Origin: Podarcis tiliguerta
Taxonomy: Eukaryota
Reading direction: 5' to 3' (one strand)
DNA length: 64,000 nt
Assembly: GCA_965153285.1 (NCBI GenBank)
Contig: OZ229121.1
Both the position numbers and the translations under genes were made by a program. A model generated the notes under the pieces. The model ran no database searches and had not been told where the DNA came from. It saw only the letters and a list, made by a program, of their open reading frames with translations. Positions 43,732 through 63,749 of the stretch are shown piece after piece; position 1 is the stretch's first letter; every line of letters starts with the position of its first letter.

Positions 43732-46700
43732 TTATAACACTGTGACACCAGATGGCGCTGTGGAGTTCCTTTTTTTGCCAACCCAATTTCTCATACAAAG
43801 TTTAACTGAAACTCTTCTTTGATTTGTCTAGATCCAGCCTTGAAAAGAAATCCCCCACCAAATGGAATATGGAAGGGAGGATGAGAGAGGAAATCAATTT
43901 GCTCAGCACTGCACATCTTTTACCTATTGCCTGGGCAGGGAGGGGGAGGATTAGAATTGGGGAGATGCATGCTGATAGATCCATACTATAGTCCTATAGT
44001 ATGATGATTGAGTCTCTAGAGCTGATTGCTGCCCCCACTATATAGCTGGAAAACGCTTCGGTTGCAGGTGGTGGCAGCCCGACCTATATGACACAGTAAG
44101 TCAGGGCTGGCAATGGAATAGTATAGTGTTGATTATCCTTCCCCAACTCCTGAAACTCCCTCTCCCCACCTGCACTTCTCTTAGGAGTGGGGATGCAATG
44201 GAACATTGTTCTGCAGGCCCCACTTGATTCCCCATTTTAGCATCTCGTTCAATTTAGCAGTGTAGCAATTCATATATATTACTCTGGAAACAAATTGTAT
44301 TATAGCTCATATTTTTAGTTCATTCAGTAAGGTGCAAGAATCCAACTGGACTGCATAATTTGAGACTTGATATAACAGTAGGACTGACACTATTTCATGC
44401 ATAAGCATTTTGCAGCTAACACAAGCATATTTTCTTGTAAGCACTTTTACTTGGATTATACAGTAGATTCTGCCCTTGAAGCAATTACGCAGCTGTTGCT
44501 GTGCACCACTTCCCTTACTCCAGAGCATTTCTAATGATTCAATGAGCACTTTGGCAGGGTAGCCAATGTGGTGACTTTCAAGTGTTATAGACTCCAACTC
44601 CCATTAGCCTTAGCCAGCATGGTCAAGGGTCAAGGTAGTCATACTGCACAAAATCTGGAGGGAACGACACTGGCTACCACTGAGTTATTGGTTACAGGCA
44701 AGTGTCTTTAGAAGTCATAATCTGATTCCATGCAGTTAGGTATACATAAGCCCATCTAAGCTTTTAAGCGTGCATAAAACCAGGCCTTTTGGTGCAAAAG
44801 TAGCAATTTCCATGCACCTGCTACAGAATATCACACAAGGTAGTTTGTCACTGTTTATGCACCACATCTTGGATGTCTTTGAAGCTTTTACCATCAGAGT
44901 AGCACGAACCTTTCCATAACTGGTCTGAATTAAAAGATTTATGAAAGTATTATGGTCCCTTCCAACTCTACAATTCTATGACTATGTCTTGTTGTCCACT
45001 GTAACACTGCCCTCTCACCTTTGCATTAGTTTTTTCTGTTTTTGTTTAATTTGGACCAATGCACCCACAGACGCATTCACCTCCACTTCCCTCACTAATT
45101 TAATCTGCTGATTTGTCAGCAGGAGCGCAAGCCTTGTGACTTCCTAATCCTCTCTTTTTCAAGTGCAATTACATAAATTCAGCACTAAGAAAGCACAAGC
45201 CTAAAATTCAAGGAGGCTGAATTACATAGACTAGTCCCAGGGCATTAAGGCTCAAAAGGGGGAGACAGGACAGAACAGGTCTTGCTGCTTTTTTGTGTCC
45301 TATTCATGCTTACTCAGGATTAAGCCCCATTTCTTAGGTTGATTTTATAGGACTGCTATCTTAGCTCTGGTACTTGTTCCATCACATATACCATACAACA
45401 GACAATGCCAACAGTTGCTATTTAAATTGATTTGGCATTTTGTTTACATTCACCACACAGTACCATTGGCTGAAGTAAATGAAATGCAGACAAATGTTGA
45501 GAGGTTAAAAAAATACTCATTTCACACGAGCTGGCTACCTTTCTACCTCTGCTTTAAAGGTACCTATTCCGTGCACTTGTTATAGCTTGAGTTTCTAAGA
45601 AGAATTTCAGGAATTCCTACATAGATAAAAACTATTTCCCCAAGTGTCTTGGGTATGCCTTAATTCATAAACTCATGACTCAAGAACTCTGAATTCTGTT
45701 ATTACAATATTCTTACAACTCTTCTAAATTTGTCACTTGACTGTATCATCATAAGCAACAGCATCCTTTCAGCTATAAACTTTATTTGAACAAGCACATA
45801 CTATTTAGAAACAGCAGGTTTCCTCCCTAGTCCTTTTTCTCTATCTAAACTTAAACCTCCGTCTTTATAGATCCTATCTACTAATATAGTTTGCAACATG
45901 CCTTACCAGAAAAGCTACTGCCCCACATCTGCTTTACACAGGTCTTGTTTTATAAAGCAACAGGAGAACCATCACCCATTGCTTAAATTACTGTTAGCTC
46001 TACTACTAAAACAAACATTTAGAACACGTGCATTCAGAAAAATCAGGTGTCCAGATAAAGGCTGAAATCATAAGGCTCCTTACTAAGGAATAAGGACCAC
46101 TGAACTTAGTGGGACCTCCTCCTAGTAAGTACGTATGCACAGGATTGCGAGGAAAGAATAATAGTGTTGTGACTCCTAACCACTGATTTATAAATCTACT
46201 AATACTAAAACCTTAGCTGTACTGTCAAGCGTCCCAAAACAGACTTCAAAGCATGAATAAATTTATTTGGAGAAAGTAGGGAAGATCGTGCTTCATTCTT
46301 AACTGCTATTCTATAAATGAGATGACAGATGGTTCTCCTAGTAGTAATAATCAAATCACTTTTATTTGGAAAGGCCGTACAATCAAAATAGATCTTTACT
46401 TAGAAGACACCAACTTCTGTATTGCAGAGCTTGCTTTCTGCACCACTTTTCAATTGGCAAATCATGTCACTAAACAAGCAAATGTTAAACCCCAGCCTAA
46501 AGAAGAATGTGCAGGGGCAAGGCCTGTTTTTCTTACCCTTCGCTACCGGCTTAAGATTCTGCGCTACGCGGCCAGGCCAGGCCAGGCCAAGCTAAGCTAA
46601 GCAGAATTCCAAATGAAATAAACTCTCTGGCGCGGTTCTAGTGCTTTTACATGGAGCCTCGGCCACGCTACTAGCGAAGCCAGAGAAACACACTGGGAGC

Positions 46701-47239
46701 ACACATGGGCAGCCGCAACTTCCTCGCACCTTTCCCCGCCCCCGCTTTTGCTATCCCGGCTCATTGCAAACGCAGAGACGCCACCTAGCGACCGGACGGC
46801 GGCACTTCCACCTAGCCCTCTCGCGCCGCCGCCGAGGCTCGCGCTCTCTCACACAGCTGCCTGCTGCACAAGGCCCAGCCCAGCAAAGTCGAAGCACAAC
46901 AAAATGGCGGCTGGCCGCCGCGTCACGTGACCCCCTTTGTGCCTTTCGGGGGGCTGAAGGGAGCCGAGCCGGAGGCCTCGGCGCTCCAGCCCAGAGCGAA
47001 AACGAGCCTCGGCCGGGTGGGGTGGGGGCTCCCGGAGGGAAGGCGACGGGGCTGTTGAGGGACTAACGTCGCCCTCTTCCCTCCCCCCCCCCCCGCACAC
47101 CCGGGGGGAGGGAAGCGGGAGGAAGCGGGGAGAAAATGGCGGCCATTTTGTGCTTGCGCAGAGGCGATGGTGGGGGCCCGGGTGTGGGGCGATGGCGGGG
47201 CCCGGCCGGAGCAGGGATGGGAGGGGGTCTCTCACGTAC

Positions 47240-47392
47240 CGACTCCTCTTCCTTCTCCATGCCCGTGGGCATCTGCGGCACGGCCCGGTTGATGGAGGCA
47301 TACTCGGCTAGGTCGGGCAAGTCCTCGCAGCGGAAGACGGGAAGCGGCTTAGACGCGTCCAGCGCCCGGGCCCGAAACGACAGTTTGCTCAT
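47240..47392 (-). CDS. EPC1: EPC1 coding exon 1 (153 nt)
   Basis: Translates MSKLSFRARALDASKPLPVFRCEDLPDLAEYASINRAVPQMPTGMEKEEES, the EPC1 N-terminus (EPcA). Donor TCG|gtacgt. Confidence 0.98.
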
Positions 47393-47919
47393 GTTAGTCG
47401 TCGGCGGCTGCGACTGCTATGGCGGCTGCTGCTCCAGCTGAGGGGGGGGAGGCAGCGAGAGCGCTCCGAGCTGAGAGCCGGACCCCGCCGAGCGCTCTCA
47501 TGGAGGGACCGGGGCTCCCGCGGCGGGGCGGGGCTCGCTCCGAGGCGGGTCCCAGCGGCGCCGGCTGGCGCGGCTAGGCTAGGGCGCCGATTTCTCTCCT
47601 CCGCCGCTCCGGCTCTGCTCAATACGCCACGGCCAACATGGCGGACATTAAACCTCGACTGGCCGCCTCTTTCAGCCAACCCCAGCGCCACAGCCATTCC
47701 CACACTGCATCGCGCAAAGGCGCGGGCACGGCGCTGCCGGGGGGGGGGGGAGAAGGGGCGCGCGGCGCGGGCACGGAGGCGAACGAGCAGGAGCGCTCGG
47801 GTTTCCCCCCCACTTTTTTTTTTTTTACTGCTTCTGCTCGGGGATGATGATGATGAAGAAGGTGGTCCCGTCTTCGTTCCCCAAAGCTGTCACTGCTCGG
47901 GAGTCTCCTTCATTGTGAT

Positions 47920-47940
47920 GCAGCAGCAGCAGCAGCAGCA
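47920..47940. repeat. (GCA)7 trinucleotide repeat upstream of EPC1 exon 1
   Basis: Seen directly within the CpG island. Confidence 0.9.
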
Positions 47941-49734
47941 CAGAAGCCGACCCAGCCGCACGCAGTTCCCTCGCACCACGCCGGAGACTGGGGAGGGGAG
48001 GGACGGCGCCGACGCCTGGAGGAAGGCACGAGGCGGCCGGGGATGCCTCAACCCCAGCGAGGCGTTAAGGAGGCGAAGAGCTTCCCCTCGGCACCGGGCG
48101 AGCTGCTCCGCGCTGAGGGCGGCATGGCACACGGCGAGGCACGGGCTCCCGGCCAGGAGCAAAAGGGCACAACACCCAATTTCTCTGTAATTATTTCGGC
48201 TACAGGGCCCGGGCTAAAAAAAACTCCAAACCAAACAGCAGCAGGACTCGCCTCCCCTGTATTGTCGCTAAACCATAATTTATCTACACACACTCCACCG
48301 AGTCACTTTGTTCTTTACTCTGGAAGACCGGGGCTCTGTGACATCAAAAAATTCTATAGAATTGACTGGGAATTGGGATGGATGTGGATATTATACACAG
48401 TTATTTGGAACGTTTAGTCTGAAATTTTGAACTTAAACCATTTCCCTAAATTTTTTGTTCACCACACACACACTTTTTAAAGAATGCACCAGGGATGAAT
48501 GAGATGCATACAACAGAACATACACCTTGGAAAATTTTGCCACCACCTTCCGTGTTAACATTGAAGCCCTTGCTTTGTAATGGCTTGACTGTGAGATATA
48601 ATTTTTTTTTTTTTTTGCTATTAACTGCATCAAATTATACAGCAGCACTTTTTAAGCTTTTTGAATTTGGCTACATTTTAAACTTCTCCTTCCTTCAGCC
48701 ACCCCCAATTGGCTAGCTGTCACAGCTTTTGACAAGTGAGTGCATGAGATTCTCACACAGCTGCCTAGAAGTACCGGTACCTGCTGCATCCCTCACTTAA
48801 CAGTAGCATACTTTAAGTAGTTATAGGCTCCACACCTCAAAAATGTAATTTCCCGAATGTAGATACAGCATGCAACGGTGTCAATGAGATTTGCTCTTCA
48901 ACATCCTAACTTTCTATGTGAAGGAATGTTTGTTATTGGGGACATCTTTCATCATAGTGCACCTGAAACAGTACCAGTCTAGTAGTTGTGAAAACCAAAG
49001 ACCACCAGCCTTTTCCCTAAATCAGCCAGCCAGGAAAGGAGGCAAGATGGGAAGAAGCTGCTATAACAGAACACAGTCTGTGCTTCTTTGCAGCTTTCGT
49101 AATTAAAAAGCAGTTTGGATGGCTGTAATAGTAAATATTTGCAGTATCTCCCCTTCCCAACTTTTCCAAAATTTTACATTTTCTCCTGAGTGTTGGACAT
49201 TCTGTTTGGGTTGACTGGAGAAGGGAAATCTATCTCATACTGGCCTAAGGAATTTGGTATTTATTGTAACATTAAAAACGACTTTACAACTTAAGCAATA
49301 GTCATTGTAGACCCTTAAATACTGTGAGGGCAAAGGTTAGATGCAGTAAATTAACAGAAAAGTAGGTATAAATACTAAATGTTTTAGAAGACACTAGGAA
49401 GACATGAAGGCCAAGTGGTATAAAACACAACCACTCACTATCTATCTGTGCAAGGCTACAAATGTACTAATAGCCATGTGATTTCTTCACATGCAAGCTA
49501 CCAGCTATCGTTCAAAGTGCAATAAATAAAACCCGTTCAACAGGCTGAACAGATTTGGAGGAATGCTTTAGGTGTCAACAGATGGTCACCTATCAGGACC
49601 CACTGGTTTGTTTTCAGACCTTACTTGAATACTCTCTTTTTTCACATTTGATCTGGAGCCTTCAATTATATTCTGCAGTCATTTGCACTGAAACACTTTC
49701 TGCATGGATTGGAAGACCACAGCAAACAGGAATA

Positions 49735-49972
49735 CAGTCGTACCTTGGTTTTTGAACAGGTTAGTTCTCGTTTTGGCTCCTGAACGCTGCAAACCTGGAA
49801 GTGACAGTTCCAGTTTGTGAACTATTTTTTAAAAGCTGAACGTTTGACAGGAATTTCAATTAGCTGCAGGAGCTTCCTGCAGCCAATCTGAAGTCGTGCT
49901 TTGGTTTCTGGACGTTTTGGAAGTTGAACGGAGTTCCAGAACGGTTTCCATTTGACTTCCAAGGTACGACTG
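49735..49972. mobile_element. Tigger/pogo-like MITE
   Basis: TA|CAGTCGTACCTTGG...CCAAGGTACGACTG|TA, a perfect 14-bp TIR. Confidence 0.85.
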
Positions 49973-50671
49973 TACTGCAGACTTGGAGCGTTTGGAGAGC
50001 TCTGCACCTTTGCTTTAAGGAGCAGCTGCATGTACAGAATACATATTCTTGGGAGGGGAAGTTGTTCTGCTATCACTCTGTGGGGGTGAACTGCGCCAAA
50101 TGATGCATACAAATTTTCCATGAATAACACCAGTGATGGAAGGGGAGGGGAAATCTTTAACAGGGTTTATCTGGCACATATTTAACTCATAAATTCAGCA
50201 AGTGCTTTATGAAAAAATAAAATGGCATTTCATATGCTTTAATAACATCACAAATATACAAAAGTCATGTCCCCCTCACTTTTTGCTAAATTACAATCTG
50301 GCACTATGGATATCTACTTGGGAGTTCAATCAAATAATATATAAAATTTCTGTCTTAGCAAGCAACAGTTTTTTTGAGAAATTCGTATTATTTTGCATAT
50401 TGCACGACATTTTCTCCAGTGGGAAGCTAAACGAAGAAATCTAACAGAGTTCAGTGGGATTTGCTCTCAAATAACTGAGCATAGGACTGCAGCTCAAAGT
50501 ACAGGTAACTGCGAGTCTGTTTTGTGGATTATAAGGAAATGCTACATGGCATGGCTTCTCTCTCCAGCTCTTCCTTAGAGTGTTTGTGCTGCTCTTTCTT
50601 GGGCTAGGCATATGTACAGGCACTACACTTACAGCTGTGCAGAGGAAGTGTGCTGAGCGGTTAATGCAGTT

Positions 50672-52287
50672 ATGAGCGAGGGTATAGCGAGGGATAGGAT
50701 GAGCTTCCGCCATGCTTTTTCTGAGCAGCATCCGGAGGCTACAAACAGCCCCATTCTACACAAAGTTCTAACGGTGCTGGACCCAACAATCTATCGCAAC
50801 ATAGATTATGATATATTGTTGAGTGACCATAAAGAACTTCTAAAATGCAGCACATAACATTCGCGGGACATCACTACAATTTAGGAGACGCATGCCAGGA
50901 CCATAATGGGGGAGGACCATAATGTCACGGTCTTCCATGAGGATCTAGGGAAGAAGCTGGTTGTATCAGCTGAGAATTTGTAGCCATTACAACAAGCTCC
51001 CGCGTTGGGCGGAGGGCCCTTTTTAAGAGGAGGTATAGATGTGAGACAACAGAGATTGTTCCAAGGAACATACAACATGGGCCCTCCTTGCTTTCTTTCC
51101 CGGGAATATTGCTTTAGGTTGGGCATCCCTATTTCCTTACACTCAAATTCCTTTTGAGCATTACCAGCCACAGCACCCTGGCAGGAAATATGGAACGCCC
51201 AAATAACACAGGTACAATCATAGATGCTTGCAGTGTAGAGGACCCTGGTTTGGAGAGTCAAACCAGGGAAAGTAAAGCACTTCAGGACTTGGAAGAAGCC
51301 GCCACTTTCTGTGAAGCCAAAGAAGACCTCAAAACTTTTCCTGCTTTTGATAATGATGGCAATGAAGGTGCAGCGGCTCCAGCTCCTGCAAGAGGTTGGA
51401 TGACAAGGTGATCACCAAGTGCATTCCCCTTTGAAGAGCCAGGTCAGCTTTCCTCCAACGAAGATGAAGAGCAAGGCGATGGAAGATCTAAGCCATGAAT
51501 CTCCAGATACGTTTAGTCAAGCAGAATCTACTGCAAGCTTTGTTGGGGCAGCTAGTTCATAATCTTCAGAAGTTCCTGTGTACAGCAGCTCCTTGGAGGC
51601 TGAAGTGGCCGGTTCAGAAGAATTTCCTCTATATGGTTACTTCCAGGAGGCTATGGTGAACCCAGCCATCTCAAGCAGCATTGTTCACCCTAATGCACCT
51701 TTGGCCTTTTTCTCCACGACTGAACATTTAGCTTCAATCAGCAGCCCTGTACCTGCATCACACTTTCCAGTACAGCCAGCCTTCATACCATCTTCTACAT
51801 CAAGTCCAGATGTATTTATTCCTGTGCAATCCTGGTGCCAACAACCTTCTCTTCTATCTGATTGTGTTGCTGGGTACAGAGAGGGAGTTGTTATTCCTCC
51901 CTACTCCTGGCCCCCAAACACATGTGACCTGCCCAAGGACCTGAGAGTAGTGCAGTTCTTCTATAATAAAGACATTCAACATTATCCCCAGAACTGCTCA
52001 ATTCCTGTGATGTGCATCACTCCATCCAACAAGCAGTTTTCATCCAGTTGGTGCATCTGCACCTGGGGCACACACTGAAGCTGCAGTATCCTTTTCAGAA
52101 CCGTAAGTTCCTGTTCATAATCAAGTCCCCCCCCCCCGAAGAACCCCAGAAGCCTATTTTTGCACCATAGCATGGAGCCCACTACCAGTTAGTGCATTTG
52201 TACCCTGATCCTTCCCCCTTGGAGTATGCTGTGCCGTTCCATGTGGTCAGATCCAGTGCACTGCATGGTGCAGCTAGCTGTCTGTAA
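50672..52287 (+). pseudogene. ALG13: Intronless, disabled ALG13-like retrocopy (Tudor plus C-terminal region of long ALG13; OTUD4/ALG13 family)
   Basis: Collinear peptides HKVLTVLDPTIYRNIDYDILLSDHKELLK, FAGHHYNLGDACQ, NVTVFHEDLGKKLVVSAENL*PLQQ, IDVRQQRLF, LEEAATFCEAKEDLKTFPAF and PPYSWPPNTCDLPKDLRVVQFFYN match recalled ALG13 motifs ([116 protein letters not shown]). Frameshifts near 50850 and 50910, stop TAG at 50981. Confidence 0.85.
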
Positions 52288-55200
52288 AAGAACAATTTTC
52301 TAGTTGCCAAGCATTCCTGTGTTTCTTTTTCCTTTTTTCATGTTTCATTTGACACAATGATTTGTTATATAGAGGAGGGGGAAGTCTGTATATTGGGGAG
52401 AGGGGTTACTACACTGCACATAGCATGCTCTCCACATAAAAATTTATTTATTTATAAATTTATAAATTTAAAAGCTGTTCTCCTTTGCGTATGATGACAG
52501 CAAGATGGAAGAATTTCCAAAGCATTATTTTGGTAGTAGTGAATTATGTCAAAATGGTACTGCCTTGCCTTTTGACTTATGTGTTTTTAAGTCGCAGCAA
52601 AAAGCTGGAATGTACTTTAATGAAATGACTGCTTTTTGTATACAATTGTATTATGATGTTCCTGGGAAGAAAGACTGGCTGTGAATTGGGTCATACATAC
52701 AAATACACTGTCTTGCCAACTAAGGCCAACACTTCTTTCTTCAAAAACAGACCGAAAATCTTGACACATACTTATAATATAATAATAATAATACTTAACA
52801 CATTTTCCAAATGTAAACACTGTAGGACATACAAGCAGACACATCTTGTTTCAATCCCATTTTATAGTAAAAAGGGCATGAAGCTGCCCAGCAGAACCTC
52901 TCATTTAGTACATTTCTATCCCACCCTTCTTCCATCAAGGAACTGAAGGTGATGCATGTAGGATCTTGGGTGGTCTCTCATCCAAACTGAGTAGACTAAG
53001 ATCTGCTTTGCTTCAGCAAAGCTCCTGTGCGTAAGACCATGTGCCTGGGATATACTAGTATTTACACTATGCTAGGCAGAATATGATCAAGATAATGAGC
53101 TCAGAAACACTGAAATGAAAAGGAACAGGATTTGCAAGGCAGGACCAAAAGACTGCAGATATATGCAGAAATTCTAGGAAAGCAAGTTCTAGGGTTATTC
53201 AAATGCTGTTACCGAACAGAAAGTTACACACAAGACATATCATATCATATAATCAGAGATGTAGGATGTGTGAGGGCCTGTAAAGAATATTACATCTTTT
53301 GCAAGATTTGTATTAATTTCACAATTTCACAGCATTAAGTTATTACAACAAGTGGCAATGGCTACTACCTTAGATGGCTTTTTAAAAGGATTAGAGAAAA
53401 TCAGAGAGGATAGTCTGTCAACGTGTATTAACGATAAAAGCTAAATTGACTCCCCATGTTCAAAGGCCGTCTCTCTGAATACAAACTGCTGGGACCAAAT
53501 AGAGGATAGCTATTAACTTCATGCCCTGCTGTTGAGCTTCCTGGCAGTCTCTGATTGGCTGCTATTGAGAAAATGCCAGATTAGCTGGAGTTCTGGTCTG
53601 AGCCAATGGCCTATTTTTATACAAGATGGGGATAAGACCATTGGCTATTATATGGTAAGTTTAGGTTGAACTAAAGACAGGAAAGGCCTTTGTAGAGTTT
53701 GCAAAGGCTTTGCAAGGGACTTACAACAACATGCTGTGGCGTCTCCATCAGGGTTCCAGACAGCCTGCTATGCCCTCTCCTAGGACACTCCGTTCAATTC
53801 CTTTCCTTTGCTCACAGAAAAGCAACATTCAGTGGTACTACTGTGTAGGCTCAGTCCTCTTTAGGATGATTTTTTTGAGGAGGGGGAGTCACTTCCTTAG
53901 GCTACCCCCTTAAAATGATCCCCTGTGGTTCTCCAGAGCCTGCCAATAGACCCCTCTTGTTTCTCCGAGGCTCCAATTTGGAGTCACCTCTGATAGCATT
54001 TATCCACTGAGTTTACTATTAGAGGGAGTTAAGGAGGCGAGGAAACCAAAAGCGGGTAGGGAGGATAGGAAACAAAAATGTGTGGATGTTTTGCATCCAT
54101 ATTGAACTTTAAAATGAGTTTATGCCAAGTCTGAATATCCTCTCTGGACATCTGTTACATAACTGACTCAAACCTTGGTTGAATGAAAATGTATTCATCC
54201 AACCAGGAATTGGAATATCAACACCATAATCAATGTGAGAGGTCAACCCTTCTTCCTCTTACTTTGTCATTTCCTTTTCCTTAAGGTTAGCTGAAATGAC
54301 ATGAAAGAATACTCAATCATTATATTTGCTGTCATCAAAGAAGATGGCCATAGATGGAATTAAACCGCTTAGGGAAATATTCCTCTGTTTCTAACAAATC
54401 AAGCAGTTCATTTGTAAACAAGTCTTCTGTCTCCTAGCTTTCCCTCATTTACTTCCCAATTAGTTGGCCCAATTTTCACATGAATTCATCATAATGGATG
54501 CTCAGTCAGTTTAAAGAATTAGGCCACTTTCATGTATGGCAGGAGCTTGAAAAATGTATTATGTCTTTCAAGTATTAACACTCCTGAAAATACATCACAA
54601 AGGGACACTGCAAACAGAGCTCTGTGGAGAAGGAGGATATCTAGGGCTTTTTATTTTTCTATATCCCATCCTACTCCCAGTTATTTACCCAGGAAGCGGG
54701 ATTTTTGTGTATAAATATCTTCCTTGCTTTATTCAGAATTTCTACATAACATGGATTTTTAATATCAAAGAATACTGTCCAGGTGGAATGGTAGGAAGAA
54801 GGACAAGAGGGGCTTATGGGCAGGCAACCAATTTCTAAGTCAGAATCAATGGACTAATAGCAGTACAAGTCACAGGCTCCCTGAACCAGCAAGATTTTCT
54901 GCAGACTTTGTAAGTCTTGCCGTGGAGATACAAAATTGTCCTTTAAAAAACAATCAGAATCTGCAGTACATTGATCTACTGTACATTGCTCCACAAGATT
55001 CTGTAGTTAATGGAAATATGGAAGAAGAAAATCTAATCAAGCTCCTTACATAGTACTTGATTACCTGCAAGATTACCTGCAATTAAAAATATCAAAGCAT
55101 TTCACGCTTTTATTTTAACTCATTTAACCTAAAAACACACACAAGCACTTGAGGCCCTTTGAATGTGAACAGATGGGTTATTTTCCTTCTACGTTTGCAG

Positions 55201-58291: not shown

Positions 58292-61038
58292 ATATCTGCA
58301 GAGGGGAGGATAGAGGTATACCCATGGATGAACTGGAGAACAACCTGGCAGCATTTGATTTAAATGGCCAGTACCACTGTAGAGTGACCCAAATCTGGGG
58401 TTAAGGTATTTCCTAGTCCTTTTAACCGAGAATGTTTAAATAGAAGTAGCAAGGAATGAACCTCAGACCTTTACACATGCAAAGCATATGTTCTGTCACA
58501 AACATGGACCTTCCCCATATACTGCTCTGAGTTCCTTGGAATAACAGAAGTATAACAAACAGCAAAATTCCACCTTATTACATGTAGTGCAACTGTGAGC
58601 AAATGGATGTGGATACTTTCCTATCAGAATGCAGAAAGGACTAAGAAGTCGTCTCTACTTATACACAGATAACAGCTGTTGTACGACTACCAGCCATGGC
58701 ACATTCATATGCCTCTTGTTTCACAACAGCTGTGCATAGAATGCACCCATGTACCAAGGTGTCTGTAGCACTGCATGGTGCAATCATGTGCTGCACTGCC
58801 ACATCTTATTGAGATGGAGGCTGCATGAGTTGCATTCCTAGATCTGTAAGAGTACATCCATGATTGGCCTTTTCAGGGAACCATTGTTGTTACACAGTAG
58901 GGCCCATAACTAGTGAAAGCATTTTCTGTTGCTAATCTGCCCATAACTGATAAAATTTTTACTTACATGCTCAAATGTAGATTTTTTAAAAAGCTATTTA
59001 CCCAACTAAATTGCCTTCCTCTTCTTTATTAAGCAAATTTACTCAGAAACCTTCAGATACATTCTGCAGCATCAAACTCCTTGTAAAGAGATTTCTTTCA
59101 AGGGTAAGAAAGAACACATTCCCTTGAGGTGTATGATATAAATATCTGTGGTACAACAGACACACATACAAAAGAAATGTCCTCTATGATTATTGTGTTC
59201 AAATGTGTGTGCCAAAGAATTCCATACCTAAATTTCTAATACAAAGAAGTTCAGAGTACTAGCGTGAAGAATTCCTAAAGAAAGAAAATTAAAACATTCC
59301 TTTACAATACTTTAGTAGATTCCCTAACCTGTTGCGTATTCTAATATATTTTTTAATCATTTCAAAACCATGCATTTATAAGATAATGCCATTTATTTCA
59401 TGATTTTGACATGTGGAACTACATCTTCCCAGCCATCTTTGCATCACATTAACCACTTTTTGTTTACATATGAACAATAAAGATTTTTGCAGGGGATGCT
59501 ATATATTTGTGTTCTTAATATGTGGTATATACACAAACACTTAAAATAGTTTGAAGACTACTTGGAAATTTATAAGAAGCTTTATGCCATATGTGTCTTG
59601 CACAAGTTAATTTCCATGTTGATGCAAATAAATCTGAATATTCCTAAAATATTTTGCAGGAGCTGAAAGAAATTGGCCAATCCTAATCTGTAGTTCATCT
59701 ATCAATGCTTTTTTAACCTTTTAAATCAGGGAAAATGAATTAGGGCTTTTAAGGCTGTACCAGCAATTATGAAAAATACTATCGCATAATGAATATATAA
59801 CACAATAAAATTATATAGACATATATGAACCCACTACACACACACACACACACACATTTTTCAGCCACTGAGAAATAATCCTGGAGAAGGGATAAAAATT
59901 ATTAAAGAATGGCATAATTCTTCACATACCTCAAGAGGATTTTTTTTAAGCAAGGGGGAAAAATCCAAACCCTGGCTCTAGTCTCACAAAACAACAAAGG
60001 ACTGTGACGACATGTCTGTTATGGTGTACACTGTACTTCACGTATATGGATTTTAATATTTTATCTATATTTTTACACACACACGCACAGTGTGGTATAA
60101 GGTTGTAGGCTGCATTTCGTTAGAAGAAAAGAGGAAATGATACAATAGATCAAATCTTGCCCCACCTTTCCCCCCACCTTTTCTTGGTGAAACGAACATA
60201 AATTGTTTAGGAGCACCACAGCGCCACCAACACAGATCAATACAAAACAAAAAAGATTTCCCACCGTGTGCAAAAAAAAAAAAAAAATCGCCTAGAAAAA
60301 TGCCAAAAATTACAAAATGTCTCCCAAATGCACCTTCTCAAAAGAAGAACACGACACCTAGATGAGGTATACTCCTTAGGAACCTTTATATAAAGAATGC
60401 TTTGAGATGAGTGACCAAAAAGCAGCTTACTGGCGAATAAAAAAGGCCAATGTTTAGTAACAGGCATAACTTAATAAAAACCCAGTTATGTCAATACCCT
60501 CCTTCAATACACGAAGGGCAGTTTCTCTGGTACTTTACACCAAGCGAAACCACCCCCACCCCCTAATTAGTCACAACCACTAATATCTTAAAGGGTATTC
60601 CTATTACAAACAATACATTTTCTTTCTTTCTTTTCTCTCTCTCTCTCTTCTCTCTCTCTCTTTGTATTATATTTTGTTCCGCACGTATTTATTATTAACG
60701 TTAGAGAGTCCAACTCCACCTTGAAAATATCCGAGTTCTTGATGGCGCCATAAAAAAAAAAAAAAATCAAAGTACAAATATATAGTTAGAATACAGTCAC
60801 TCCTAGGGAGAAAAGCAAGATAGGTTTATAATACTCAGAAATAATGAGACGACGTTTAGTGTGCTTAATTAGGAGAGCTCAGACCTCGGGGTGGGGGTGG
60901 CGCGGGGGGGGGGGAACAAGCCTACATTAGATTCATCAACATTAAGGAACATGATTATTATTATTCTTTTTGCGCTAGCCGATTGCCGCGAAAAAGAAAA
61001 TATAAACATACATATTTGAAAGACTGGGGAAAACTTAC

Positions 61039-61320
61039 CTCGAAAGGCAAGCAGACAGCTGCCTCCTCACAACGACGGGAAGAAAATAGGTTGTGTATAG
61101 TTTCTCGCTTGCAGATAGCCGCCTCCACGCAGCCAAAGGATCCCCGAACATCTTGAAAAAACCTTTGCAAACGACCACGGAGACCCTCTCCCAGGATCGG
61201 CGGCGGATCCCGGAGGTTTTTTTGCTCGGGATCTGTGGGGGGCGTTTGGGTAAACCGGAGAAATATCCAAAGAAGATTAAAAGCAAGAGGCGGCAGGAGC
61301 CAGAAGACTCTGGGGTTAAC
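61039..61320 (-). other. EPC1: Probable distal alternative first exon of EPC1 (5' end approximate)
   Basis: CpG-enriched block about 60880-61340, a consensus donor GAG|GTAAGT at 61039/61038 in EPC1 orientation, and a CCAAT box (CCAATCAG) near 61348-61355 upstream. Confidence 0.6.
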
Positions 61321-63749
61321 AACTTTGTAATGGCAAACAGGCGTGTTCTGATTGGTTGGGAGGGCAGTGTCCCTCCACAGTCTGCACTATCCCCCGCTCT
61401 CCCCCTTCTGCAGCCTGGAAAAAATGCAGAAATGCAGTGTGCCATTTTATACAGGCTTTAAAAACACACCCCAAACCCAGCCACCGAAAGCATAGGCATC
61501 ACATTTTTTTGTGTGACACTGCAAAACAAGAGCTCCCCCAAAAGCTTTACCAAAAAAAAAAATTTTAAGGTCTCCTTCAGTACATATAAACGTGTCCTTG
61601 GGGTGCAGAGAAAAGAGGGAAAGAAAAGAGACGCACAAAAATAATCCACACAGGGGGGCTGGGCCATTTCCCCCTCCCACCTCAATTCTTTCTTCTAAAA
61701 TCACGTCCAACTGTGAAACAAGGCAATTGCCCAGCCGCCCCCACCCCGGTCAAGGAACCTAGAACCATTTTTATTATTATTATTTTAATGTAAAGAAATG
61801 AGTTTGCCTGAATGATATCACCTAAAAAAGCCAGTCACGCCTGGAACAAAAATCCATGACTCCTTGATACAGAATTTGAGAGGCTGCTGCAACAGTAGGA
61901 AAGGTTTCCTTCCCCCCTCACAAATCTGCTTACCTACCGTCATAGGCAGAGAGCCAAGAATATTAATTTCAATAGATACATCCATTGTGGTAGGCATAGT
62001 TATTCTACAAAGAATGTTTAAAATCCCCTCCTTATACTGACTGACAGAATTCTACCATGCTGCCCACAAACAAAATGGCTGTGGCACTGAGTTTTTTTGG
62101 ATCCTCCCACCGTGCTTCTCCCCCCGCGGCCTCCGGGAAGTGGTAGAAATCCAAAATAAATCAGTACTCCAAGTACAATGCCCAATCCAAACTCCCCATG
62201 ACATCGGGAAAGGCGAGGGGCTCTGAGAAGACGCGGTCCTATCTTGAAGGGATTTTTAAAAATTGTTTAAAAATGTGCATCAATCATTGGGAATTTACAT
62301 GGCAGTGTAATCCGAACTTCCTGCTTTACATATGTATGAGGTCTTTCACCTATCTTGGCAGGCTTTCAAATTAAGTGGGCTGGGAAATTTGATGCTGTGT
62401 ATCTTCAGTTGCGAGCTGAGTCAGGTACTCAGTCGCTGTGTGCTGGTAAAAATGAAGGCGAAACGCCTGGCCTAACAAAGGAAAAAAGAGAGAGAGAAAT
62501 CAAAATCTGGCAACCCCAACCCTCCATTTCCCCTTTCACTCTTTTGGAGGGTATATTTAATTAAGCAAGGCAAGTTACTATGAATGTGGACTCTCTACAA
62601 AAGTACAAACATGGAACTTTGTGTCTTAAGTGTTTTGTATAATTATTTGTGTGTATGCTATATGCATTTATGACTTCAACTGATATTATTTCTTTGTGAT
62701 CAACCATAAATGTTAGTTCTGTCCAGTTCTTTACACTAAAGGGAAATATTGTTTATTCAAATTTAATTTACTGGCAATTTATTTCAAACCTTGAAACATT
62801 AGATATGACACATTTCAGGTGCCAATTCTCCAGAACCTGCAATGCTCCCCACTGAGTTCTCATGGGTGTTGTTTACTTCAATGAAAGGTATTTTATTAGA
62901 AAGCCTCAAAACACTTATAAAATAGTCCCCATTGAAGACTACTCTTGATCACAAGAATTGTGACTTTATAATGCAAGCTATAAACTACTTAAGCCAGAAT
63001 GTTTTCACTTAAATTAGCTTAACTCCACTGGTGGCAGTAATAAACTTCAGTAGGACCAAGCTGGTTTAATAGATTTCAATGGAATATATTTACAAACAAG
63101 CATTTTATTCAAATTTCAGTTTTGCAACCTAATTTCAAAAGGCTGTTTTAGCTGAAACAGTAATACCCACATTACCCCCCCCCCCACACATTTATACTAC
63201 TGTAGCATAAACTACATTGTATCCTCTGAGCCCCCACTCTGCTCATGACATTTCAATACACAGAAAGCCTTTTAATTTCCCTTTGTTTGGAAAATACTGG
63301 TATTGAACAAAAGATACAGAACCTTTTGATTCTGTGATGGGTCATAAGTGGAACCAAATATTTATTGCAAACTAATAAAAAATAATAATGTTTTAATACT
63401 GTTATGAACCACCATGGGATTAGTAACATGAAAGGGCAGGATATAATTTAATAAATATGCAAACTTATTTCACAGCAGTACGGATGGTGGCTGTGCCAGC
63501 TCTCTGGCACTGGTGCTTTCATATGTTAAATCCCATTAGATACTGCTTTAGTATTTCAGCACAAAGGACTAGGTCATATGTAACAAAATCAAAAGCTTGA
63601 ATATACATTTCTGGATTGATTTATGCATGCAGTGCCAGCCCAAGACATTTTGGCACATGAGGTAGACCCCAAAATTGCACGCGCACACACACACACCCTG
63701 CCAGGGAAGAAGGGGTGAGAGAAGATCTACATCATGAACAACCAGAGAA

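What the first reader, a model, noticed from the sequence alone, without database searches (positions are those of the whole stretch)
50672..52287. Hidden ALG13-derived Tudor retrogene relic nested antisense between the two EPC1 promoters
Seen: six collinear motif blocks of long ALG13 within 1.6 kb, with no introns, several frameshifts and stops, and an AT-rich tract near 52435-52473. No glycosyltransferase or OTU domain is visible. The frame opens with its own ATG about 30 codons before the first conserved block. Many changes in the motifs are conservative (VEFD>IDYD, LQYYFN>VQFFYN) while linkers appear shortened. Inference: this may have been a selected, catalytic-domain-less Tudor retrogene of the otu/OTUD4/ALG13 family, possibly germline-expressed, that later decayed and might be intact in other squamates. 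I know of no such gene at the mammalian EPC1 locus.
Basis: partly seen in the sequence, partly recalled or inferred. Interest (0 to 1): 0.8.

Follow-up and report, generated by a model that had tools for sequence, protein, structure and literature searches.

The report
Dead ALG13 retrocopy upstream of EPC1
This stretch of wall-lizard DNA is a broken, intron-free, front-truncated copy of the ALG13 deubiquitinase/Tudor gene that landed about 3 kb upstream of EPC1; it looks like an ordinary processed pseudogene, and nothing shows it ever worked as a gene.

Summary
The observation largely holds. On the + strand, 50657-52075, four collinear blocks match a profile of 83 teleost ALG13 proteins. They are the four best hits among 3426 six-frame pieces of the window (E 3.5e-11, 6.7e-4, 0.01, 0.78). 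They cover the pre-Tudor YRN block, both ends of the Tudor domain and the C-terminal PPYS..DLP.D.RV.QF.N block. No OTU or glycosyltransferase match exists anywhere in the window.

Fish ALG13 genes have two introns inside the last block, and the lizard copy is contiguous there, so it is a processed copy. It has at least 6 frame changes and 5-6 in-path stops.

Lesions differ between lineages. This genome has a private 38-bp deletion in the Tudor. Sister species carry a 5-bp and a 15-bp deletion. Two ORFs from another lineage (P0001, P0144) lack one stop but share a frameshift before the last block.

All named hits are ALG13, but no tetrapod ALG13 or OTUD4 sequence could be fetched, so the parent is settled only at family level. 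Nothing supports the 'once selected, intact elsewhere' idea or the 'between two EPC1 promoters' idea. Expression is unresolved. The scan had no earlier ALG13, OTUD4 or Tudor note in this genome.

Verdict: ordinary 5'-truncated processed pseudogene, low interest.

The parts
50657..50854 (+). First stop-free piece (frame 0), with the ATG at 50672. Block 1 at 50726-50845 is the pre-Tudor 'KVL..LD..YRN..D' motif.
   Evidence: Profile positions 233-272, E 6.7e-4 against 3426 pieces. tblastn with P0002, P0004 and P0005, summed E 2.6e-5 to 9.7e-5 with block 2.
50839..50898 (+). Block 2, start of the Tudor domain ('FAG..Y.LGD.CQ'), frame 2. It is reached from block 1 by a 1-base shift in an A run near 50840.
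   Evidence: Profile positions 271-290, E 0.01. X13 and X14 show no indel at the shift, so it is shared with them (table 8 gap counts).
50899..50907 (+). Site of a 38-bp deletion private to this genome, in the middle of the Tudor domain. It causes the frame 2 to frame 0 jump.
   Evidence: Runs X13, X14 and X17 have 45 letters where the window has 7 (table 5). With them the span between blocks 2 and 3 is 57 nt, which is in frame and 19 codons, against 21 in the teleost profile.
50918..50983 (+). Block 3, end of the Tudor domain ('VTVF.E.LG.K.VV'), frame 0. It is closed by an in-path TAG at 50981-50983.
   Evidence: Profile positions 312-330, E 0.78 window-wide and 0.013 among the 63 local + strand pieces. 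Translation.
51108..51224 (+). Candidate fourth block in frame 1 ('FEHYQPQHPGRKYGTPK*HRYNHR'), with a stop at 51204-51206.
   Evidence: Not significant against the teleost profile. The resemblance to ALG13 rests on my memory only. A second locus in species D matches this piece at 82% (record 5).
51412..52075 (+). Frame-0 stretch of 221 codons, broken here only by TAA at 51560-51562. It contains the 171-codon open piece 51563-52075 and block 4, with the core 'PPYSWPPNTCDLPKDLRVVQFFYNKDIQHYPQNC' at 51896-52000.
   Evidence: Profile positions 643-742, E 3.5e-11. phmmer hit to teleost ALG13 P0002, E 3.1e-5. P0001 and P0144 have Gln at the stop. It is contiguous where fish genes have two introns.
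52171..52287 (+). Candidate C-terminal end in frame 2 ('EYAVPFHVV..SSALHGA'), with TAA at 52285-52287.
   Evidence: Translation. Not testable with the teleost profile. The second locus in species D matches 52211-52323 at 88%.
52440..52470 (+). AT-only tandem tract (AAATTTAT)x3.9, possibly a degenerate poly(A) tail.
   Evidence: Tandem Repeats Finder. No target-site duplication above chance.
47240..47392 (-). Context: EPC1 exon 1 (residues 1-51), inside the only CpG island (46401-48400).
   Evidence: E 6e-28 to EPC1 chains in solved structures. ORF. CpG scan.

Best explanation
It is a processed pseudogene. A long ALG13-type mRNA (OTU, Tudor and a disordered C-terminus) was reverse-transcribed and inserted on the + strand about 3.3 kb upstream of EPC1 exon 1, in the opposite orientation. 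The copy was cut short at its 5' end, within the linker between the OTU and Tudor domains. That truncation alone explains why it has no catalytic domains. It most likely never had a function and has decayed neutrally since an early lacertid ancestor.

Shown:
- homology to ALG13
- collinearity of the blocks
- absence of two introns
- absence of the OTU and glycosyltransferase parts
- many lesions, some shared and some specific to one lineage

Inferred:
- the retroposition mechanism
- that the parent is ALG13 rather than OTUD4
- that it was dead on arrival
- that the AT tract is a poly(A) remnant
For: - The four best hits of a profile of 83 teleost ALG13 among 3426 six-frame pieces all lie on the + strand in 50726-52000 and are collinear (profile 233-272, 271-290, 312-330, 643-742). 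tblastn agrees.
- phmmer against 1.84 billion representatives gives teleost ALG13 as the only named family. The profile search gives only ALG13-named fragments.
- Fish genomic ORFs P0135, P0137-P0143 read through introns after 'DLPR' and after 'NLGVQ'. The lizard DNA is contiguous there, 51929-51997.
- No OTU or glycosyltransferase match in the 64 kb.
- At least 6 frame changes and 5-6 in-path stops.
- Lesions arose independently. This genome has a 38-bp deletion. Species D and E have a 5-bp deletion at 51766. D, E and F have a 15-bp deletion at 51969, inside the most conserved block. P0001 and P0144 have their own 8-residue gap and a frameshift before block 4.
- In the two whole-genome runs, divergence from sister species is the same in the relic and its flanks: 2.1-4.0% against 2.5-3.7% (table 8).
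- Only 18 of 28 columns that are 99% conserved in teleosts are kept.
- An AT-only tract lies 150 bp after the last stop.
Against: - No target-site duplication above chance, and no clean poly(A).
- The parent was never compared directly. No tetrapod ALG13 or OTUD4 sequence could be obtained. No tetrapod protein reached E 0.001 against the 171-residue piece, so the copy is not very close to any extant representative.
- The 171-codon open piece is long for old neutral DNA. It was 221 codons in the ancestor shared with the P0001 lineage. The chance of no stop in 171 codons is 0.11 at 0.1 substitutions per site and 0.012 at 0.2. Loss at conserved columns suggests roughly 0.13-0.2. This mild tension leaves room for a short functional phase.
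- In runs X15 and X17 the relic is about three times more diverged than the few flank pieces. This is unexplained.
Confidence: 0.72

Rival explanations
1. It was once a working, OTU-less Tudor retrogene. It kept an open frame under selection for a time, then died around the lacertid radiation, and may survive intact in other squamates.
For: - The ancestor shared with the P0001/P0144 lineage had at least 221 open codons at 51412-52075.
- The Tudor was in frame in sister species.
- The open stretch is improbable if neutral divergence exceeds about 0.15 per site.
- Conserved-column loss hints at 0.13-0.2.
- An ATG precedes block 1.
Against: - All lineages seen are broken.
- No intact relative exists among 1.84 billion representatives.
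- Key invariant residues (W, G, G, P) are replaced.
- The 'conservative' changes are single-base changes expected under neutrality.
- The ATG lies in a small tandem duplication.
- The statistical tension is weak once one allows for picking the longest open piece.
- dN/dS could not be measured.
Confidence: 0.12
2. It is a processed pseudogene of OTUD4, the paralogue of ALG13, not of ALG13.
For: - OTUD4 and ALG13 share the OTU-Tudor layout (PMC4654579; PMC12147562).
- No OTUD4 sequence could be fetched for a head-to-head test.
- From memory only, a few residues (DLPKD, FF, LGKK, DHNG) resemble human OTUD4.
Against: - Every named hit in three searches is ALG13, none OTUD4.
- Block by block, more residues agree with the teleost ALG13 profile (LDP.IYRN, KEL.K, VTVF, RV.QF, Q.C) than with what I recall of OTUD4.
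Confidence: 0.1
3. It is an exon of a living non-coding transcript, for example a divergent transcript from the EPC1 CpG-island promoter. The ALG13 relic would then be raw material and not the functional unit.
For: - The relic is on the strand that a divergent EPC1 promoter transcript would use.
- Run X15 has contigs over 50224-52283 at depth 12-36 against 0-5 in the flanks.
Against: - The tool only guesses that X15 and X17 are RNA.
- X17's depth fits low-coverage DNA.
- Contigs show neither strand nor ends.
- No Rfam match.
- Sequence divergence in the relic is not lower than in the flanks.
Confidence: 0.2

Closest known systems
Processed pseudogenes (LINE-mediated retrocopies of spliced mRNAs)
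   Same: Intron-free copy of a multi-exon gene at an unrelated locus. It is 5'-truncated, carries frameshifts and stops, has an A/T-rich tract after the 3' end, and diverges neutrally from sister species.
   Different: No recognisable target-site duplication and no clean poly(A). The parent mRNA was not compared directly.
ALG13 long isoform (OTU, Tudor, Pro-rich C-terminus)
   Same: The pre-Tudor block, both ends of the Tudor and the C-terminal 'PPYS..DLP.D.RV.Q..N' block occur in the same order.
   Different: No glycosyltransferase part and no OTU domain. The reading frame is broken, and several invariant residues are replaced.
HIN1L / OTUD4P1, the human pseudogene of the same family
   Same: A dead member of the OTUD4/ALG13 family in a vertebrate genome (PMC4654579, PMC3705208).
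   Different: HIN1L is placed in OTU-domain trees, so it keeps an OTU domain, and the lizard relic has none. Its locus was not checked, and I have no evidence of orthology.

Membership tests
Processed pseudogene (retrocopy) | Homology to a protein-coding parent gene located elsewhere | tested here: met
   Four collinear blocks match the ALG13 profile. The locus is EPC1 upstream DNA.
Processed pseudogene (retrocopy) | Introns of the parent are absent | tested here: met
   Two intron positions seen in fish ALG13 genomic ORFs are contiguous in the window at 51929-51997. This assumes the lizard parent shares those positions.
Processed pseudogene (retrocopy) | Poly(A) tract at the 3' end | tested here: inconclusive
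   Only an AT-only tandem tract at 52440-52470.
Processed pseudogene (retrocopy) | Flanking target-site duplication | tested here: not met
   The best shared word is 9 bases. Shuffles give 1.7 such matches by chance. This is expected for an old insertion.
Processed pseudogene (retrocopy) | Disabling lesions and neutral evolution | tested here: met
   At least 6 frame changes and 5-6 stops. Indels are lineage-specific, and divergence equals that of the flanks in the whole-genome runs. P0001 and P0144 are broken elsewhere.
ALG13/OTUD4 OTU-Tudor family | OTU cysteine-protease domain | tested here: not met
   No match to profile positions 1-160 anywhere in the window. P0002 itself hits Pfam OTU.
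ALG13/OTUD4 OTU-Tudor family | Tudor domain | tested here: inconclusive
   Both ends of the region called Tudor in the literature are present, but it is broken by a deletion and a stop. Pfam does not detect a Tudor even in intact P0002.
ALG13/OTUD4 OTU-Tudor family | Conserved C-terminal 'PPYS..DLP.D..VLQYYFNLG' block | tested here: met
   E 3.5e-11 to the profile.
ALG13 specifically (against OTUD4) | Closer to ALG13 than to OTUD4 of the same or a near species | not testable with these tools
   No tetrapod ALG13 or OTUD4 sequence could be fetched. All named hits are ALG13.
Functional retrogene | Intact ORF in some lineage, with dN/dS below 1 | tested here: not met
   No intact relative was found. 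All lineages seen are broken. dN/dS was not computable.

The most novel reading that the evidence does not exclude
Lacertid or other squamate lizards once had a working ALG13-derived gene without a catalytic domain, made only of the Tudor domain and the disordered C-terminus. It died near the lacertid radiation. A living copy may persist, either at this locus in other squamates or as the second intron-free ALG13-like locus seen in a sister species (run X13, record 5).
Probability: 0.1. Interest if true: 0.45.

Novelty: new member of a known kind. Interest (0 to 1): 0.15.

Why it matters
As a dead retrocopy it matters little. It is a dated neutral marker upstream of EPC1 that could help lacertid phylogeny through its shared and private indels. 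It also shows that the long ALG13 mRNA was present in the lizard germline. Only if a functional Tudor-only phase or a living copy were shown would it say anything about the non-catalytic roles of the OTU-Tudor family.

Tried and rejected
- Pfam on seven stop-free pieces: nothing.
- Solved-structure sequence search with the 171-residue piece: nothing.
- ESM Atlas with the piece and with the Tudor part of P0002: nothing usable.
- Word search with P0002 to reach tetrapod ALG13 or OTUD4: the 120 listed hits were all teleost ALG13.
- Profile search with the relic, P0001 and P0003: only fish fragments besides the relic's own relatives. These did reveal the intron positions.
- Solved structures contain no ALG13 or OTUD4 chain beyond other OTU domains.
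- Target-site duplication search: chance level.
- Self-similarity of 50-53 kb against the window: none.
- Rfam: none.
- A second EPC1 promoter upstream: only a small CpG-rich patch at 61.0-61.4 kb with no EPC1-like ORF.
- Literature: HIN1L/OTUD4P1 is the known pseudogene of this family in humans, but its locus is not given in the papers read.
- The broken frame was never joined. Pieces were searched apart.

Full report
**Setting**

The window carries the 5' part of EPC1 on the minus strand. The ORF at 47240-47392 (minus) matches residues 1-51 of EPC1 in solved structures at E 6e-28. It lies in the only CpG island of the window, 46.4-48.4 kb. Earlier notes of this scan call the genome a wall lizard, Podarcis; I did not test that. 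The finding lies 3.3-4.9 kb upstream of EPC1 exon 1, on the other strand. I found no second EPC1 promoter or first exon upstream of it. There is only a small CpG-rich patch at 61.0-61.4 kb with no EPC1-like ORF. 'Between the two EPC1 promoters' is therefore not confirmed.

**The observation**

The + strand of 50600-52480 has no long ORF. It has stop-free pieces that alternate between frames. Pfam, solved structures and the ESM Atlas gave nothing for the pieces.

A phmmer search of the 171-residue piece (51563-52075) against 1.84 billion representatives gave three hits:
- P0001, a 144-residue ORF from a Logan contig, 80% identical;
- P0002, E 3.1e-5;
- P0003.

P0002 is a teleost protein that NCBI names ALG13 isoform X2. 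It has an OTU domain, the Tudor region and the C-terminal 'PPPYSYDPNGSDLPRDCRVLQFYFNLGVQWY' block.

I built a profile from 83 teleost ALG13 proteins and scored all 3426 six-frame stop-free pieces of the window. The four best hits all lie on the + strand inside the finding and are collinear:

| Window | Frame | Profile positions | E |
|---|---|---|---|
| 50726-50845 | 0 | 233-272 | 6.7e-4 |
| 50839-50898 | 2 | 271-290 | 0.01 |
| 50918-50974 | 0 | 312-330 | 0.78 |
| 51698-52000 | 0 | 643-742 | 3.5e-11 |

The next hits, elsewhere in the window, have E above 3. tblastn with nine teleost proteins shows the same picture. Nothing in the 64 kb matches the OTU domain or a glycosyltransferase.

The teleost profile does not reach the other two, near 51108-51224 and 52171-52287. 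They resemble what I recall of human ALG13, which is a lead and not a test. The ATG at 50672 and the AT-rich tract, (AAATTTAT)x3.9 at 52440-52470, are real. The ATG sits in an 11-nt tandem duplication.

**Processed copy**

The last word search returned fish genomic ORFs that run from ALG13 exons into introns. P0135, P0141 and P0142 read 'SDLPR', then unrelated residues, then 'DC[RK]VLQYY[FY]NLGVQ', then unrelated residues. P0137-P0140 and P0143 break off after 'SDLPR'. The fish gene therefore has introns after DLPR and after NLGVQ. In the window 'CDLPKDLRVVQFFYNKDIQHY' is contiguous DNA. Intron positions are usually shared among vertebrate orthologues, which is an inference here. On that basis the lizard sequence derives from spliced mRNA.

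The missing OTU part is what 5' truncation produces. No target-site duplication above chance was found. That is not surprising for an old insertion.

**Decay**

The homology path changes frame at least six times. It carries stops at 50981, 51204, 51409, 51560, 52076 and 52168. Contigs of four public runs from sister species were laid on 49000-54000.

- In the two whole-genome runs the relic differs from the window by 2.1-4.0%, and the flanks by 2.5-3.7%.
- Where the window has 7 letters at 50899-50907, runs X13, X14 and X17 have 45. The window therefore has a private 38-bp deletion in the Tudor. With the 45 letters, blocks 2 and 3 are in frame, 19 codons apart against 21 in the profile.
- X13 and X14 share a 5-bp deletion at 51766.
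- X13, X14 and X15 share a 15-bp deletion at 51969, inside the most conserved block.
- The 1-base shift near 50840 is shared by the window, X13 and X14.
- P0001 and its cluster mate P0144 have Gln where the window has the stop at 51560. They share an 8-residue gap and a frameshift just before block 4, which puts that block out of frame.

Different lineages thus carry different lesions, and none seen is intact.

**Was it ever selected?**

By parsimony, the ancestor of the window lineage and the P0001 lineage had at least 221 open codons at 51412-52075. About 4.3-4.8% of substitutions there would create a stop. The chance of no stop in 171 codons is 0.11 at 0.1 substitutions per site, 0.036 at 0.15 and 0.012 at 0.2.

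The relic keeps 18 of 28 columns that are 99% conserved in teleost ALG13. Allowing for tetrapod-specific differences, this suggests roughly 0.13-0.2 substitutions per site since the copy left its parent. The number of stops suggests about 0.07-0.1.

This mild tension would allow a short functional phase. It is weak for three reasons: the longest open piece was picked after the fact, the true parent is unknown, and the numbers are small.

The highly conserved W, G, G and P of the profile are replaced. No intact relative turned up in any search.

**Parent**

All named hits are ALG13. No OTUD4 or tetrapod ALG13 sequence could be obtained. The literature says mammals have OTUD4, ALG13 and the pseudogene HIN1L/OTUD4P1 (PMC4654579, PMC3705208). 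It also says the family carries a single Tudor domain (PMC12147562). I give ALG13 as the likely parent and OTUD4 about 0.1.

**Expression**

Run X15 covers 50224-52283 at depth 12-36 against 0-5 in the flanks. The tool only guesses that X15 and X17 are RNA. X17's depth relative to a high-copy repeat fits low-coverage DNA. Contigs show no strand and no ends. Expression is unresolved. Rfam finds nothing in 48-54 kb.

**Verdict**

This is a 5'-truncated processed pseudogene of an ALG13-type mRNA. It is shared by several lacertid lizards, is decaying neutrally, and is of low interest.

Noticed in passing
window 49733-49974: Very high-copy element with terminal inverted repeats (GTCGTACCTTGG...CCAAGGTACGAC). 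Summed contig depth there is 63,785-233,653, against about 42 for single-copy DNA in whole-genome run X13. It looks like a MITE.
   Followed up: partly
run X13, record 5 (3063 nt), laid on window about 50914-50943, 51018-51046, 51108-51224 and 52211-52323: A second single-copy locus in a sister species is collinear with pieces of the relic at 82-88% identity, but with much shorter spacers (35 letters for 74, 349 for 986). It may be another intron-free ALG13-like copy. It could not be fetched.
   Followed up: no
window 50224-52283: Run X15 (kind only guessed as RNA) covers this span at depth 12-36, while the flanks are at 0-5. In X15 and X17 the relic is about three times more diverged from the window than the few flank pieces. 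It could be a transcript, a capture target or extra copies.
   Followed up: partly
window 50884-51411, minus strand: A stop-free stretch of 176 codons lies antisense to the relic. It has no Pfam match and is probably a by-product of the former coding frame.
   Followed up: partly
window 61001-61400: Small CpG-rich patch (GC 0.51, observed/expected CpG 0.73) far upstream of EPC1. No recognisable ORF, unassigned.
   Followed up: partly
proteins P0002 and P0004-P0122: Teleost proteins named ALG13 start directly with the OTU domain and show no glycosyltransferase part. Pfam does not detect the Tudor domain in P0002.
   Followed up: partly
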